Notes under the pieces: model-generated
Told to the model about the DNA's origin: nothing
What the model saw: only the letters and a program-made list of their open reading frames with translations
Databases searched by the model: none
Translations under genes and position numbers: made by a program
Part shown: positions 7,256 to 18,573 of the stretch, piece by piece
Layout: every line of letters begins with the position of its first letter
How positions within the stretch are numbered: position 1 is the first letter of the stretch
From: Saccostrea echinata
Lineage: Eukaryota
Length of the DNA: 64,000 nucleotides
Assembly: GCF_033153115.1 (NCBI RefSeq)
Contig: NW_026889791.1
Location: forward strand, 1,302,001 to 1,366,000
Direction: 5' to 3'

Positions 7256-7620
7256 TTATGCATATGCAAATTTATTCATTGAATATCCTGCAGCTGGACC
7301 TCCTATTGCTTGGACGGGTTGAATTGGAAAGGGGGCAGGGCCTGACATAATGGCGGGACCACCAGCATGGATTCCAGCTCCTCCCCCTATAAAACCTCCT
7401 CCTATGGAGGCCACAGGACCACCTGCGTGAATTCCAGCCCCTCCAAAGCCACCTCCAATAGAAGCGACTGGACCACCTACATGAATACCAGGTCCACCTC
7501 CTATTGAGGCCACGGGGCCACCTCCTCCTATGAAACCTCCTCCAATGGCACCTCCTGGGCCGCCGCCAATTAAACCAGCCCCGCCCCCTATGAATCCCCC
7601 TCCTTCTTTACCTTTGGAGT
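7256..7620 (-). CDS. Exon 16 (terminal coding exon), Gly-rich repeat domain
   Basis: ACAACAG acceptor (weak pyrimidine tract) in frame with ORF 7256..7513; GGGFIGGG, GGPVASIGGG and GIH(A/V)GGP repeats; TAA stop. Confidence 0.9.
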
Positions 7621-16600: not shown

Positions 16601-18573
16601 TAAACATTAAAAAGATTGTTAATCAGAATGTTCTTTCCCTTTATAAATTACGAGATACACAATAATTTTACTTCCATAAAGTGAATCTGTAAAAATATAT
16701 ATGTTTTTCATATTTAATATATAAAGTTGCTTATCATTTACTATCGAAAAAACGACAGGTCCCTTTTTTTAGAAGATCGAATTTTACTTATCGCATAAAA
16801 ACGTAAAAATGTACTTTACACAGTTCGTGTTTTATATTCTTAAAGTGAAAGACATTTTTGAAAATAGGTGATGCATGTGTCTGGTTTCAAATTATATTTT
16901 ATGCAGCCAACATTTACTTGAGAAATTGATAAAGTTTAAAATGGTAATCGTTTTTGTTCGATTTTCATCCGACTATAAGTTTTCAAAATATTCTCGACTA
17001 TTGTCTCCATCATTTAGACGCATGCCTTTTTCATACATATCGAAGCGGTTTAATGATCAAAACTCATTTCCATTGTTTACTTTATTTATTTCCCGGGCGA
17101 CAATTGATGGTTACATCAATGTTTTCTTGTTATTTAATGACTTAACTATGTGAAAGAAGTGTTAAATCGTTGTCATATTAATTAACTCTTAAGTACCTTT
17201 TTAACTGCATCAAGAAAGCATTGCTTTTAACATTTAATGTTTTACACACGGTGTACATCCGTAGCACAAGAGAATAATTATATAATATTTTCTATATGAA
17301 ATTGTTAACATGACAGTTTTATTCTTTCTGGGCCGCTTACGCCAATGCTGACATAACGACATTCACAAGAACAAATGGCGTCTTGTACATAAACATGACA
17401 TTATACCATGCATCAGATACGCTTCATTGCCCTGGGCCCCATACATCATTGAACACTGCAGCGTAATAAAATGCACAGAAGATATCAATTGATCATTTCA
17501 CGCTTGGCTAATTTAACTTAAATACATTAGCATATTTTTGCCTAATTGCAGGTGCTAAATCCTTTTATCAGCCCGATTTCGTCGAATCGCTTGATTCGTG
17601 TGACCACTTTGCGACACATAAGTCATTCAGAAACTAGCTATGAAGAATGATGAATTATTTTCATTTACTAGTGTTGTTTTATTCAAATTGCACATAATTA
17701 ATCCTCAGGTGATTTATTAAGCTTAACACAATAAGTTTATTTGACAATCCGTTTAATGAATTTGTTTTAAAAAGTAAAAAGACCCTTTTGAATATCCAAT
17801 GATATGAAAGTGTGGAAATTGACGGGTCATTTAAGTTAGCTTGTTCTCTGAATGTCACTGCCAAAAACGGTTCTTGATCTTACATTTTACGACAATCGTG
17901 AAAACACTTACCGGCAAGAGCCCCGACTGAAAATTAAAAAAAAAAAATAACATTAAGCAAATTAATTTATCTTAATTAATATTTTCTTGTGAGCTATTAG
18001 AAAATGTCAAATCTCATAATGACAATGTTCTTTTTTTTCATAGCACAAAAATATGACATAGTATCTTAAGAAAATTAATGAATGGTAAATTAGGAGTATC
18101 ATTGTTATCTATGCATGAATTTTTATTTTAAATTTGCAGTTTCCTTGTTTTCCATATCATACACGGAAATTAATAGTTGATTTTTTTTTCAAGGAGTTTT
18201 TCCCCTTTAAACATTAATTTTAATAAAGACCAGACTATTTTAAATTGATTTCAAATCTGCTTGCTGCTTCTTCATTATTCAGTTGATTTGATATGATATA
18301 ATTGATTTGATGATATATACTTGCAGAATTTGGAGGGGAAAAAATAAATTGAAAATTGAACTTTATTATTATTTTTTTTTTTTTAAAATCAAACACCCCT
18401 TAATTCCTTTTTAATGCTCAAAATCCACAAACTGTCTCAACCATTCTTTAATCAATCACAATTTCAATAAAAAATAAATATTGGGAAAAAAATTAAATTT
18501 CAAAAATTTAATTGCATAATTAATACAGTTTTGAAAACTTACCAATAAGCGATAACAATAAGGCCGCAATCAT
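7256..18573 (-). CDS. Secreted V/I/K/P/H-rich + Gly-rich structural protein (alveolin-like/valine-rich shell- or cuticle-matrix type), 16 exons, ~354 aa
   Basis: Exons (minus): 18543-18573, 17912-17926, 14808-14828, 14622-14672, 14267-14344, 13719-13760, 11877-11912, 11537-11584, 11253-11288, 10926-11003, 10538-10579, 9051-9086, 8503-8586, 8275-8286, 8064-8153, 7256-7620. All introns GT-AG and phase 1. Spliced ORF has no internal stop: MIAALLLSLIVGALA EPSVHVV PHAKQAVHEVAHDVHRH VGLIHQVPVVQKEVKVIRNEIPRIVT RPKIIRKTKVHVQK YIYDKPFIRKHT IIKPVEVVKKFDVHKT VDVPTPIHKVRT VVRPVHVDQPYPKIVIKKKTVFKENK IFRPKPVFEERVTI KKQPVPVPITEH VFKNVPQPRLVVKKIPVDIFKHIHRVRK EPVA VANVKTVGVEFPVIDRKKIHVPVAKAHGGY DSKGKEGGGFIGGGAGLIGGG...AGYSMNKFAYA*. 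The functional class is inferred from composition only. Confidence 0.88.
8064..8153 (-). CDS. Exon 15, 90 nt
   Basis: TCTTTCAG acceptor, GTAAGT donor. Confidence 0.88.
8275..8286 (-). CDS. Exon 14, 12-nt microexon (EPVA)
   Basis: Strong pyrimidine tract TTTTCTTTTATTTTTCAG, CAG|GTATAC donor; GC-rich island in an AT-rich intron. Confidence 0.7.
8503..8586 (-). CDS. Exon 13, 84 nt
   Basis: TTCCTCATAG acceptor, AAG|GTACAG donor. Confidence 0.85.
8634..8793. mobile_element. Tc1/mariner-pogo-type MITE remnant (intron 12)
   Basis: TA-CAGTG...CTG-TA ends; internal similarity to 29859-30027. Confidence 0.5.
9051..9086 (-). CDS. Exon 12, 36 nt
   Basis: CCTTTCAG acceptor, GTAAGT donor. Confidence 0.85.
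9417..9960. mobile_element. Degenerate HINE/Helentron-derived element (intron 11)
   Basis: Terminal hairpin TGTCG..CGACA, GTCC/TGTC microsatellite remnant, TGACCTTGACCTTTGA motifs. Confidence 0.5.
10538..10579 (-). CDS. Exon 11, 42 nt
   Basis: ATTTTCAG acceptor, GTAAGT donor. Confidence 0.85.
10715..10882. mobile_element. Tc1/mariner-pogo-type MITE remnant (intron 10)
   Basis: TACAGTAAAACT...AGTTTCACCGTA inverted ends. Confidence 0.5.
10926..11003 (-). CDS. Exon 10, 78 nt
   Basis: CTTCTCTTTCAG acceptor, GTAAGG donor; peptide visible inside ORF-track entry 10888..11085. Confidence 0.88.
11253..11288 (-). CDS. Exon 9, 36 nt
   Basis: CTCTTTTCAG acceptor, CAG|GTGAAA donor. Confidence 0.82.
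11537..11584 (-). CDS. Exon 8, 48 nt
   Basis: TTTTCTCTTCAG acceptor, CAG|GTAAAT donor. Confidence 0.85.
11877..11912 (-). CDS. Exon 7, 36 nt
   Basis: ATTTCAG acceptor, GTAAGT donor. Confidence 0.82.
12084..13371 (-). mobile_element. HINE-like (Helentron-derived) element with ~8 internal tandem monomers of ~140-155 bp (intron 6)
   Basis: Hairpin ATGCCCC...GGGGCAT (12089-12117), (GTCT)n microsatellite, GAGTTTGACC recurring at ~12291, 12448, 12595, 12740, 12881, 13017; other end GGGGCAT + GTGTTT-CGC-AAACAC hairpin. Confidence 0.8.
13719..13760 (-). CDS. Exon 6, 42 nt
   Basis: TCTCTCTTTCAG acceptor, GTGAGT donor. Confidence 0.85.
14267..14344 (-). CDS. Exon 5, 78 nt
   Basis: CCTTACAG acceptor, GTAAGT donor, V/I/K/P-rich frame. 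Confidence 0.88.
14622..14672 (-). CDS. Exon 4, 51 nt, His-rich (PHAKQAVHEVAHDVHRH)
   Basis: TTTTTTAG acceptor, GTAAGT donor. Confidence 0.85.
14808..14828 (-). CDS. Exon 3, 21-nt microexon (EPSVHVV)
   Basis: TTTCCCTTTCAG acceptor, GTAAGT donor. Confidence 0.8.
15534..16008. mobile_element. Kolobok-like MITE (intron 2)
   Basis: Perfect 17-bp TIR GGTCAAGATCTAGTAAA with TTAA on both flanks. Confidence 0.85.
17912..17926 (-). CDS. Exon 2, 15-nt microexon (VGALA), completes signal peptide
   Basis: Long T tract + TTTCAG acceptor, G|GTAAGT donor; gives an A-x-A cleavage motif. Confidence 0.8.
18543..18573 (-). CDS. Exon 1 coding part (MIAALLLSLI), signal peptide start
   Basis: ATG, hydrophobic codons, donor G|GTAAGT. 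Confidence 0.85.

What the first reader, a model, noticed from the sequence alone, without database searches (positions are those of the whole stretch)
7256..18573. Hidden micro-exon gene: 16 exons, every intron phase 1, encoding a secreted fibrous-type protein
Seen: 14 internal exons of 12-90 nt (15, 21, 51, 78, 42, 36, 48, 36, 78, 42, 36, 84, 12, 90), all multiples of 3 and phase 1-1. They splice into one 354-aa ORF with a signal peptide built from exons 1+2. The ORF track shows the correct frame only for exon 10 and part of exon 16. Known: strings of symmetric micro-exons allow frame-preserving exon skipping, as in schistosome micro-exon genes and in tropoelastin. V/P/K-rich alveolin-like or valine-rich proteins and Gly-rich shematrins occur in pearl-oyster shell matrix. 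Inference: a modular mollusc structural-protein gene that could make length or composition variants by exon skipping, and that automated annotation probably mis-models.
Basis: partly seen in the sequence, partly recalled or inferred. Interest (0 to 1): 0.9.

Follow-up and report, generated by a model that had tools for sequence, protein, structure and literature searches.

The report
Micro-exon gene for valine-rich secreted protein
The predicted gene is in the sequence as described: 16 small same-phase exons on the minus strand join into a 354-residue secreted protein that looks like the valine-rich "alveoline-like" shell-matrix proteins of bivalves with a glycine-rich tail, so it is a tidy new member of a known kind, and its proposed exon-skipping variants could not be tested.

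Summary
On the minus strand, 16 exons between 18573 and 7256 all have AG/GT borders. Joined, they give one 354-aa ORF with no Cys and no Trp. Strong micro-exon candidates cluster here about tenfold above the window background (P about 8e-6). Exon GC is 47% against 32% for the span.

The protein has three parts:
- a 15-aa signal-like N-terminus;
- a 217-aa V/K/P/I/H-rich basic body;
- a 122-aa Gly-rich tail, almost all from the last exon.

The body's length, mass and composition almost coincide with the published Pinctada fucata Alveoline-like shell-matrix protein. All 23 body prolines sit on odd residues. Exons 5-15 are all multiples of 6 nt. The exon sizes repeat as a 240-nt block.

The genome is probably not P. 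fucata, since two Alv primers are absent. No paralogue was found.

Verdict: a real gene and a new member of a known family, with a gene architecture I did not find described. Other first-stage notes in this scan cover this same stretch.

The parts
18641..18646 (-). TATA-like box 73 nt upstream of the ATG
   Evidence: TATATA, distance 73; sequence read
18543..18573 (-). Exon 1, coding part of 31 nt. ATG at 18573. First 10 1/3 codons of the signal peptide. Donor GTAAGT.
17912..17926 (-). Exon 2, 15 nt, phase 1-1. Completes the 15-aa signal-like segment, which ends in ALA.
14808..14828 (-). Exon 3, 21 nt, phase 1-1
14622..14672 (-). Exon 4, 51 nt, phase 1-1, His-rich segment
14267..14344 (-). Exon 5, 78 nt, phase 1-1. 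First exon of 240-nt block A.
14085..14123 (-). Candidate extra exon 'E5b', 39 nt, phase 1-1, not in the model. Weak acceptor (acaaag), strong donor, atypical Y/S-rich peptide. It would break the multiple-of-6 rule and the proline register. Probably a decoy.
13719..13760 (-). Exon 6, 42 nt, phase 1-1
11877..11912 (-). Exon 7, 36 nt, phase 1-1
11537..11584 (-). Exon 8, 48 nt, phase 1-1, donor GTAAAT
11253..11288 (-). Exon 9, 36 nt, phase 1-1, donor GTGAAA. Last exon of block A.
10926..11003 (-). Exon 10, 78 nt, phase 1-1. First exon of 240-nt block B.
10538..10579 (-). Exon 11, 42 nt, phase 1-1
9051..9086 (-). Exon 12, 36 nt, phase 1-1
8503..8586 (-). Exon 13, 84 nt (= 48 + 36), phase 1-1, donor GTACAG. 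Last exon of block B.
8275..8286 (-). Exon 14, 12 nt, phase 1-1. Strong acceptor, weak donor GTATAC. An alternative donor 9 nt further on (8266) would give 21 nt.
8064..8153 (-). Exon 15, 90 nt, phase 1-1. End of the V/K/P-rich body.
7256..7620 (-). Exon 16, coding part of 365 nt including the TAA at 7256-7258. Encodes the Gly-rich tail and contains a 54-nt unit in 2.0 copies. The acceptor is pyrimidine-poor.

Best explanation
This is an intact, apparently single-copy protein-coding gene on the minus strand, running from a TATA-like box near 18641-18646 to the stop at 7256. It encodes a 354-aa secreted, strongly basic structural protein.

A 15-aa signal-like segment is split over exons 1 and 2. 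Thirteen small phase-1 exons (E3-E15, 12-90 nt) then encode a 217-aa body rich in Val, Lys, Pro, Ile and His. This body belongs to the 'VPV-motif' kind of protein. Pro always falls on one face of a two-residue register, and Val, Lys and Arg fall mostly on the other, which fits extended beta-strand assemblies. One large terminal exon adds almost all of a 122-aa Gly-rich tail.

The body corresponds to the alveoline-like / valine-rich shell-matrix proteins of pteriomorph bivalves. By inference, the product is secreted by the mantle and built into the insoluble organic framework of the shell or a related secreted structure. The beta-forming, Lys-rich body would associate with itself, chitin or acidic matrix proteins, and the Gly-rich tail would give a shematrin-like flexible or cross-linkable end.

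The gene grew by exon-block duplication: a 240-nt block of 78-42-36-48-36 was repeated as 78-42-36-84. Because exons 5-15 are multiples of 6 nt in the same phase, every exon carries a whole number of dipeptide units.

Shown: the exon structure, the ORF, the composition, the register and the exon-size repeat. Inferred: secretion, family membership, tissue, function, and any alternative splicing.
For: Gene structure and reality of the gene:
- Exon structure and the 354-aa ORF.
- Clustering of strong splice-flanked, open phase-1 micro-exons far above background, Poisson P about 8e-6.
- Exon GC 47% (44% without E16) against 32% for the span, and a TATA-like box at -73.
- No Cys and no Trp, with uniform V/K/P/I/H composition across exons.

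Match to Alveoline-like protein:
- Body residues 16-232 are 217 aa, 25.1 kDa, pI 10.5, V 21.2%, K 14.7%, P 10.6%, H 7.8%, R 6.5%.
- Published P. fucata Alv mature protein is 217 aa, 24.9 kDa, V 23.0%, P 12.9%, K 12.0%, R 8.3%, H 7.8%, with a 16-aa signal peptide and about 80% predicted beta-strand. It is found in the EDTA-insoluble matrix and is strongly mantle-expressed (PMC6095885; PMC4660305).
- A Perna viridis shell protein named 'valine-rich protein-like' has a signal peptide and Gly 18.3%, Val 16.7%, Pro 11.3% (PMC6641155). The mature protein here has G 15.0%, V 15.0%, P 10.0%.

Register and exon pattern:
- All 23 body prolines are on odd residues, and V, K and R are mostly on even ones.
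- Autocorrelation is positive at most even lags and negative at most odd lags.
- The exon-size block repeat has a permutation p of 0.003-0.009.

VPV-type proteins:
- They are known to carry such a register and to self-assemble into filaments (articulins, PMC2120578 and PMC2289617).
- Pearl-oyster MP10 and alveolin-like ESTs were likened to articulins (PMC3191542).
Against:
- There is no alignment-level homology. The joined model could not be searched, and the exons (29 aa or less) are too short.
- The tail gave 0 hits in 1.84 billion representative proteins, no Pfam family and nothing in the Atlas.
- Composition matches can arise by convergence in low-complexity proteins.
- The published Alv has no Gly-rich tail. 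Its C-terminus, read from the cloning primer, ends shortly after a GG.
- The tandem MP10-type neighbour reported in P. fucata is not present in this window.
- The E16 acceptor is weak, so attachment of the tail to the body is the least secure junction.
- No canonical AATAAA lies within 650 nt after the stop.
Confidence: 0.6

Rival explanations
1. The gene model is right, but the product is a structural protein of another secreted material rather than a shell-matrix protein. Candidates are periostracum, byssus, hinge ligament, egg envelope, or gill or gut lining.
For: No expression data could be obtained. Gly-rich tails and basic V/P/K-rich segments occur in several bivalve secretions. [quoted passage not shown] The His-rich N-terminal part resembles metal-binding ends of byssal proteins; this last point rests on my own knowledge.
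Against: The quantitative match to Alv is close. V-rich and V/G/P-rich proteins have been recovered directly from Pinctada, Mytilus and Perna shells.
Confidence: 0.22
2. One reading: the string of symmetric phase-1 exons is used as a cassette system, and regulated exon skipping produces a family of length or composition variants.
For: All 14 internal exons are phase 1-1 and multiples of 3. Exons 5-15 are multiples of 6 nt, so any skipping also keeps the two-residue register. Several exons have weak donors (E8, E9, E13, E14), which is typical of alternative exons. A related oyster protein is listed as 'isoform X4'.
Against: There is no direct evidence here. Phase 1-1 symmetry is the usual by-product of exon duplication in secreted proteins and does not imply skipping; this is established knowledge, for example Patthy's exon-shuffling rule. 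Most splice sites are strong consensus sites, which favours constitutive inclusion.
Confidence: 0.25
3. The V/K/P-rich body (E1-E15) and the Gly-rich exon (E16) are not one constitutive product. E16 would be an alternative terminal exon or part of a separate transcript, and the main product would be an Alv-sized protein of about 233 aa that ends elsewhere.
For: The E16 acceptor has only 3 of 11 pyrimidines, against 7-11 for all other acceptors. The published Alv is 233 aa and ends just after a GG motif, at the position equivalent to the end of E15.
Against: No alternative terminal exon with a good acceptor was found in intron 15 or elsewhere. Read-through from E15 into intron 15, translated by eye from the sequence, adds about 19 residues unlike the body before a stop. 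E16 is open only from its predicted acceptor, in exactly the phase E15 requires. A Perna shell protein combines high Gly, Val and Pro in one chain.
Confidence: 0.12
4. It is a chance alignment of splice-like motifs, or a dead pseudogene.
For: No canonical poly(A) signal was seen.
Against: The Poisson probability is about 8e-6 for the strong candidates alone. In addition, the exons are collinear, the frame is uninterrupted from an ATG with a signal-like start to a stop, the composition is uniform, exon GC is raised, and the proline register is 23 of 23.
Confidence: 0.03

Closest known systems
Alveoline-like protein (Alv) / valine-rich protein of pearl oysters (P. fucata KR872410; P. margaritifera H2A0K6; P. 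maxima homologue)
   Same: Both have a signal peptide of 15-16 aa. The mature V/P/K/R/H-rich basic region is 217 aa and about 25 kDa with nearly the same residue percentages. Both are beta-prone VP-type sequences. The primer-derived Alv peptide fragment resembling '..ETVGV' has a counterpart '..KTVGV' in exon 15; this comparison was made by eye and is only a lead.
   Different: This protein carries a 122-aa Gly-rich tail that is absent from the 233-aa Alv. pI is 10.5 (body) against 11.3. Sequence identity could not be measured. Two P. fucata Alv primers are absent from this genome, so this is at best an orthologue or paralogue in another species. No adjacent MP10-type paralogue was found.
Val-rich 'alveoline-like' and 'valine-rich protein-like' shell proteins of mussels and oysters (Mytilus galloprovincialis fibrous-prism proteins; Perna viridis CL4671.Contig1; C. 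virginica XP_022307204.1)
   Same: All are secreted, rich in Val, Pro and Lys, and found in the insoluble matrix. The Perna protein combines Gly 18.3%, Val 16.7% and Pro 11.3% with a 17-aa signal peptide, close to G 15.0%, V 15.0%, P 10.0% for the mature protein here.
   Different: Only compositions and names were compared, with no alignment. The gene structures of those proteins are not described in the papers read.
Articulins, plateins and alveolins of protists (VPV-motif membrane-skeleton proteins)
   Same: They are rich in Val and Pro with a strict two-residue register of V, P and charged residues, have beta-sheet content and self-assemble into filaments. The same kind of register is seen here.
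   Different: Articulins have 24-30 or more regular 12-residue repeats and are intracellular. Here no 12-residue period was detected, the protein has a signal peptide, and the organism is an animal. The resemblance is probably convergent.
Tropoelastin gene
   Same: Many small exons all split codons in the same phase-1 way, so exons can be skipped in frame, and the product is a hydrophobic V/P/G-rich, Lys-bearing extracellular fibrous protein. This rests on my own knowledge and was not tested here.
   Different: This gene has no VPGVG-type repeats, no poly-Ala-Lys cross-linking exons and no alternation of two exon classes. It is unrelated in sequence and lineage.
Schistosome micro-exon genes (MEGs)
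   Same: Both have the signal peptide in the first exons, symmetric internal exons, and a secreted product with potential for variants.
   Different: As I recall the MEG definition, most of a MEG's coding sequence lies in exons of 6-36 nt. Here only 156 of 1065 nt (15%) do. No skipping has been shown, and the phylum and protein are unrelated.
Shematrins, abductin and other Gly-rich bivalve matrix proteins
   Same: The tail has 38.5% Gly, with GGG-X motifs interspersed with hydrophobic residues and an 18-aa repeat.
   Different: This is a compositional resemblance only. There was no hit in any search. The tail is not Met- or Tyr-rich.

Membership tests
Alveoline-like / valine-rich shell-matrix proteins (bivalves) | N-terminal signal peptide of about 15-17 aa | tested here: met
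   The 15-aa hydrophobic start ends in A-L-A before E-P-S. This was judged by the -3/-1 rule only; no SignalP was run. Alv has 16 aa and the Perna protein 17 aa.
Alveoline-like / valine-rich shell-matrix proteins (bivalves) | Val/Pro/Lys/Arg/His-rich, strongly basic mature region of about 217 aa with few acidic residues | tested here: met
   The body is 217 aa with V 21.2%, K 14.7%, P 10.6%, H 7.8%, R 6.5% and pI 10.5. Published Alv has V 23.0%, P 12.9%, K 12.0%, R 8.3%, H 7.8% and pI 11.34.
Alveoline-like / valine-rich shell-matrix proteins (bivalves) | Significant sequence similarity to H2A0K6, the KR872410 product or relatives | not testable with these tools
   The joined model may not be sent to search tools. 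Single exons are 29 aa or less.
Alveoline-like / valine-rich shell-matrix proteins (bivalves) | High mantle expression and presence in the shell matrix | not testable with these tools
Alveoline-like / valine-rich shell-matrix proteins (bivalves) | Tandem neighbour of the MP10 type, as reported for P. fucata | tested here: not met
   No exon-level paralogue was found in the 64-kb window or, for E5, E10, E13, E15 and E16, in the genome. This feature is a lineage observation, not a strict criterion.
Articulins (VPV-motif proteins) | Core of many tandem 12-residue VPV repeats | tested here: not met
   Autocorrelation shows a period-2 signal but no significant lag-12 signal (z 0.6-1.8).
Articulins (VPV-motif proteins) | Two-residue register of V, P and charged residues | tested here: met
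   23 of 23 body Pro are on odd residues. On even residues are 28 of 40 V, 21 of 31 K and 10 of 13 R, counted over residues 39-232.
Schistosome-type micro-exon genes | Most of the CDS encoded by symmetric exons of 36 nt or less | tested here: not met
   Exons of 36 nt or less sum to 156 of 1065 nt.
Schistosome-type micro-exon genes | Protein variation by exon skipping demonstrated | not testable with these tools
   No RNA data could be reached.
Tropoelastin-like gene architecture | All internal exons split codons in the same phase-1 way | tested here: met
   15 of 15 introns are phase 1.
Tropoelastin-like gene architecture | Alternating hydrophobic (VPGVG-type) and Ala/Lys cross-linking exons | tested here: not met
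   The per-exon peptides show no such two-class alternation.

The most novel reading that the evidence does not exclude
The gene is a register-preserving cassette system. Exons 5-15 are all phase 1-1 and multiples of 6 nt, so any subset of them can be spliced together without disturbing either the reading frame or the two-residue Pro/Val beta-strand register. The mantle could then tune the length of a self-assembling VPV-type framework protein by exon choice, for example between larval and adult shell or between shell layers. This would be a bivalve analogue of tropoelastin or MEG splicing, with an extra structural constraint written into the exon lengths.
Probability: 0.12. Interest if true: 0.65.

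Novelty: new member of a known kind. Interest (0 to 1): 0.4.

Why it matters
Valine-rich alveoline-like proteins are among the most abundant framework proteins of pearl-oyster prisms, and related Val-rich proteins occur in mussel shells. In the papers I could search, however, neither their gene structure nor micro-exon genes in bivalves are described.

This locus gives a clean, fully resolved example with several features of interest:
- a 12-nt exon;
- uniform phase-1 introns;
- exon lengths tied to a dipeptide register;
- a fossil exon-block duplication.

It therefore shows how such low-complexity matrix proteins grow by exon duplication. It also explains why ORF-based or automated gene finders can miss them or truncate them. 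And it offers a concrete, testable candidate for in-frame isoform variation.

It does not reveal a new kind of system.

Tried and rejected
- **Joined-model searches.** Searches, folds and exact look-ups of the spliced 354-aa protein were left out. The model was joined only inside scripts, to check the frame and compute composition.
- **Exon 16 alone (120 aa).** It gave 0 hits in 1.84 billion representative proteins, no Pfam family and no usable Atlas hit. Because of this blank, the search for homologous proteins was not spent on it: its length window would exclude full-length relatives.
- **Exons 5, 10, 13 and 15.** No Pfam match. Each finds only itself in the genome, and there are no paralogues in the window.
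- **Species test.** Two P. fucata Alv primers are absent from the genome. The two M. virgata 'valine-rich secreted protein' primers are absent from the window. The species stays unidentified.
- **Extra exon E5b (14085-14123).** Rejected as constitutive. It has a weak acceptor and an atypical peptide, it breaks the multiple-of-6 rule and the proline parity, and about 1.8 such decoys are expected by chance in the span.
- **21-nt version of exon 14.** Considered less likely for the same register reason.
- **Regular 12-residue articulin repeat.** Not found.
- **Protein similarity between the two 80-aa blocks.** Weak: 12 of 80 identical, z about 1.9. The duplication rests on the exon-size pattern.
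- **Further cassette exons.** A composition-guided scan of the introns found none that were convincing.
- **Literature.** Searches for micro-exon genes in bivalves and for intron phases of shell-matrix genes found nothing relevant.

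
Full report
**1. What is in the sequence**

The feature lies on the minus strand. Reading the region and anchoring each exon with a script gave 16 exons:

| Exon | Window coordinates | Size (nt) |
|---|---|---|
| E1 | 18543-18573 | 31 (coding part) |
| E2 | 17912-17926 | 15 |
| E3 | 14808-14828 | 21 |
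| E4 | 14622-14672 | 51 |
| E5 | 14267-14344 | 78 |
| E6 | 13719-13760 | 42 |
| E7 | 11877-11912 | 36 |
| E8 | 11537-11584 | 48 |
| E9 | 11253-11288 | 36 |
| E10 | 10926-11003 | 78 |
| E11 | 10538-10579 | 42 |
| E12 | 9051-9086 | 36 |
| E13 | 8503-8586 | 84 |
| E14 | 8275-8286 | 12 |
| E15 | 8064-8153 | 90 |
| E16 | 7256-7620 | 365 (including the stop) |

- Every acceptor is AG, mostly in a tttcag context, and every donor is GT; nine of the 15 read GTAAGT.
- All 15 introns are phase 1.
- The joined CDS is 1065 nt and gives a 354-aa ORF with a single terminal stop.
Among ORFs of 40 aa or more, only 10888-11085 (containing E10) and 7256-7513 (part of E16) are in the true frame.

**2. Is it more than chance?**

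I scanned both strands of the whole window for strict micro-exon candidates. The criteria were at least 8 of 11 pyrimidines before the AG, a GTRAG donor, 9-120 nt, a multiple of 3, and an open frame in phase 1.

- The 11.3-kb span holds 10 candidates on the minus strand, and 8 of them are model exons.
- The remaining 116.7 kb (both strands) holds 10, or 0.086 per kb.
- The Poisson probability of 8 or more where 0.97 are expected is about 8e-6.

On top of that:
- the exons are collinear;
- the frame runs from an ATG with a signal-like start to a stop;
- exon GC is 47% (44% without E16) against 32% for the span;
- a TATA-like box lies 73 nt upstream of the ATG;
- the exon peptides share one unusual composition, with no Cys and no Trp.

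I regard the gene as real, with chance or a pseudogene at about 3%.

**3. Weak points of the model**

- A 39-nt phase-1 interval at 14085-14123 has a GTAAGT donor but a poor acceptor and a Tyr/Ser-rich peptide unlike the rest. Including it gives 367 aa. About 1.8 decoys of that quality are expected in the span, and it would break the regularities described in section 4.
- Exon 14 has a strong acceptor but a weak donor (GTATAC). A GTGAAA 9 nt further on would make the exon 21 nt.
- The exon 16 acceptor has only 3 of 11 pyrimidines, so the body-tail junction is the least secure.
- No canonical AATAAA lies within 650 nt after the stop.

Only RNA data can settle these points.

**4. The protein**

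Residues 1-15 form a hydrophobic signal-like segment ending in A-L-A. This was judged by the -3/-1 rule and not by SignalP.

Residues 16-232 form the body:
- 217 aa, 25.1 kDa, pI 10.5;
- V 21.2%, K 14.7%, P 10.6%, I 9.7%, H 7.8%, R 6.5%.

Residues 233-354 form the tail:
- Gly 38.5%, Ala 13.1%, Ile 11.5%, Pro 9.0%;
- an 18-aa (54-nt) unit in 2.0 copies.

The body has a strict two-residue register.
- All 23 prolines are on odd residues.
- Over residues 39-232, on even residues are 28 of 40 Val, 21 of 31 Lys and 10 of 13 Arg.
- Autocorrelation is positive at most even lags and negative at most odd lags, but there is no clear 12-residue period.

Exons 5-15 are all multiples of 6 nt, and from exon 4 onwards every intron splits the codon of an even-numbered residue. 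Each of these exons therefore carries a whole number of dipeptide units.

The exon sizes also repeat as two adjacent 240-nt blocks, 78-42-36-48-36 and 78-42-36-84.
- A permutation test on the observed sizes gives p = 0.003-0.009.
- The two 80-aa blocks are only weakly similar as proteins: 12 of 80 identical, z about 1.9.
- This looks like an old exon-block duplication with one intron gained or lost.

Two other first-stage notes on this same stretch (s1-807528 and s1-807606) had proposed the register and the block duplication. I re-tested both here.

**5. What it resembles**

Sequence searches could only be made exon by exon, by reference.

- Exon 16 alone found nothing in 1.84 billion representative proteins, Pfam or the Atlas.
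- The body exons are 29 aa or less. They found only themselves in the window and genome and no Pfam family.
- The gene therefore appears to be single-copy in this 923-Mb genome, as far as exon-level searches can see.

The literature gives the best comparison.

- P. fucata Alveoline-like protein (Alv) is a 233-aa protein with a 16-aa signal peptide.
  - Its mature part is 217 aa and 24.9 kDa, with V 23.0%, P 12.9%, K 12.0%, R 8.3%, H 7.8% and pI 11.34.
  - About 80% is predicted beta-strand. [quoted passage not shown]
  - The body encoded here has the same length, mass and composition.
- Mytilus galloprovincialis has abundant Val/Pro/Lys-rich alveoline-like proteins in the insoluble matrix of fibrous prisms (PMC4517812).
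[quoted passage not shown] That is close to the whole mature protein here (G 15.0%, V 15.0%, P 10.0%).
- Pearl-oyster MP10 and alveolin-like ESTs were likened to articulins (PMC3191542).
- Articulin VPV repeats carry the same kind of V/P/charge register and self-assemble into filaments (PMC2289617 and PMC2120578).

Differences:
- Alv ends just after a GG motif, at a position equivalent to the end of exon 15. This is read from its cloning primer. The protein here continues into a Gly-rich exon.
- P. fucata has an MP10 gene next to its alveolin-like gene (PMC4759782), and no paralogue is nearby here.
- Two P. fucata Alv primers have no match in this genome, one searched at up to 3 mismatches and one at up to 2, so the source is probably another bivalve. 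I could not identify the species.

**6. How it most likely works**

Shown:
- the gene structure;
- the signal-like start;
- the basic V/P/K body with a period-2 register;
- the Gly-rich tail.

Inferred:
- The product is secreted, most likely by the mantle epithelium.
- It becomes part of an insoluble organic framework.
- The alternating-face, Pro-punctuated strands of the body associate laterally, as VPV proteins do.
- Its many Lys, Arg and His residues bind acidic matrix proteins or carbonate, or serve as cross-linking sites.
- The Gly-rich tail provides a flexible, shematrin-like end.

I put about 0.9 on 'real gene', 0.6 on 'alveoline-like / valine-rich family' and 0.5 on 'shell matrix'.

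It is wholly untested. Phase 1-1 symmetry is the expected by-product of exon duplication in secreted proteins, and most sites here are strong consensus sites.

**7. Novelty and score**

The protein is a new member of a known family or kind. The body-plus-Gly-tail arrangement has at least a compositional precedent in Perna.

The gene architecture is not described in the papers I could search. It comprises uniform phase-1 micro-exons including a 12-nt exon, exon lengths locked to a dipeptide register, and a fossil block duplication. Other unverified notes report further micro-exon secreted-protein genes in this genome (s1-803154 and s1-817748), so this may be a common design there.

I score interest at 0.4. 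It is a neat, well-supported annotation and a good test case for micro-exon-aware gene finding and for in-frame isoform variation, but it is not a new kind of system.

**8. Limits**

- There is no alignment to any family member.
- No SignalP and no structure prediction were run on the joined protein.

Noticed in passing
window 12323-13094 (also 9570-9770): Intron 6 of the gene holds a tandem array of a unit of about 148 nt (5.4 copies, 73% matches) rich in 'ttgaccttgacc' motifs. A related motif recurs in intron 11. It is probably a bivalve satellite or MITE-like repeat.
   Followed up: partly
window 27065-28083 and 31124-31504, plus strand: There are two C1q-domain ORFs (Pfam PF00386, E 4.6e-17 and 7.3e-20). 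The first is preceded by an ORF that gave only weak, sub-threshold Pfam matches to coiled-coil-type families and may be its first exon. One P. fucata shell-proteome table labels 'Mantle protein 10 (PFMG1)' as C1q, and MP10 is reported next to the alveolin-like gene in P. fucata. A conserved neighbourhood is therefore conceivable, but C1q genes are very numerous in bivalves and another paper describes MP10 as articulin-like.
   Followed up: partly
window 14085-14123, minus strand: A 39-nt phase-1 open interval has a GTAAGT donor and a weak acceptor. It is a possible rare cassette exon, but more likely a decoy.
   Followed up: yes
window 10236-10301 and 13640-13662: Long homopolymer runs lie inside introns: poly-T followed by poly-G at about 10255-10295, and poly-G at about 13645-13661. 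They are possible assembly-sensitive sites.
   Followed up: no
other pieces of the same genome (notes s1-803154, s1-817748): Other first-stage notes report further 'hidden' micro-exon genes for secreted proteins, one with 17 or more symmetric 27-60-nt exons and one with ten exons and phase-2 introns. Micro-exon secreted-protein genes may be a recurrent class in this genome.
   Followed up: no
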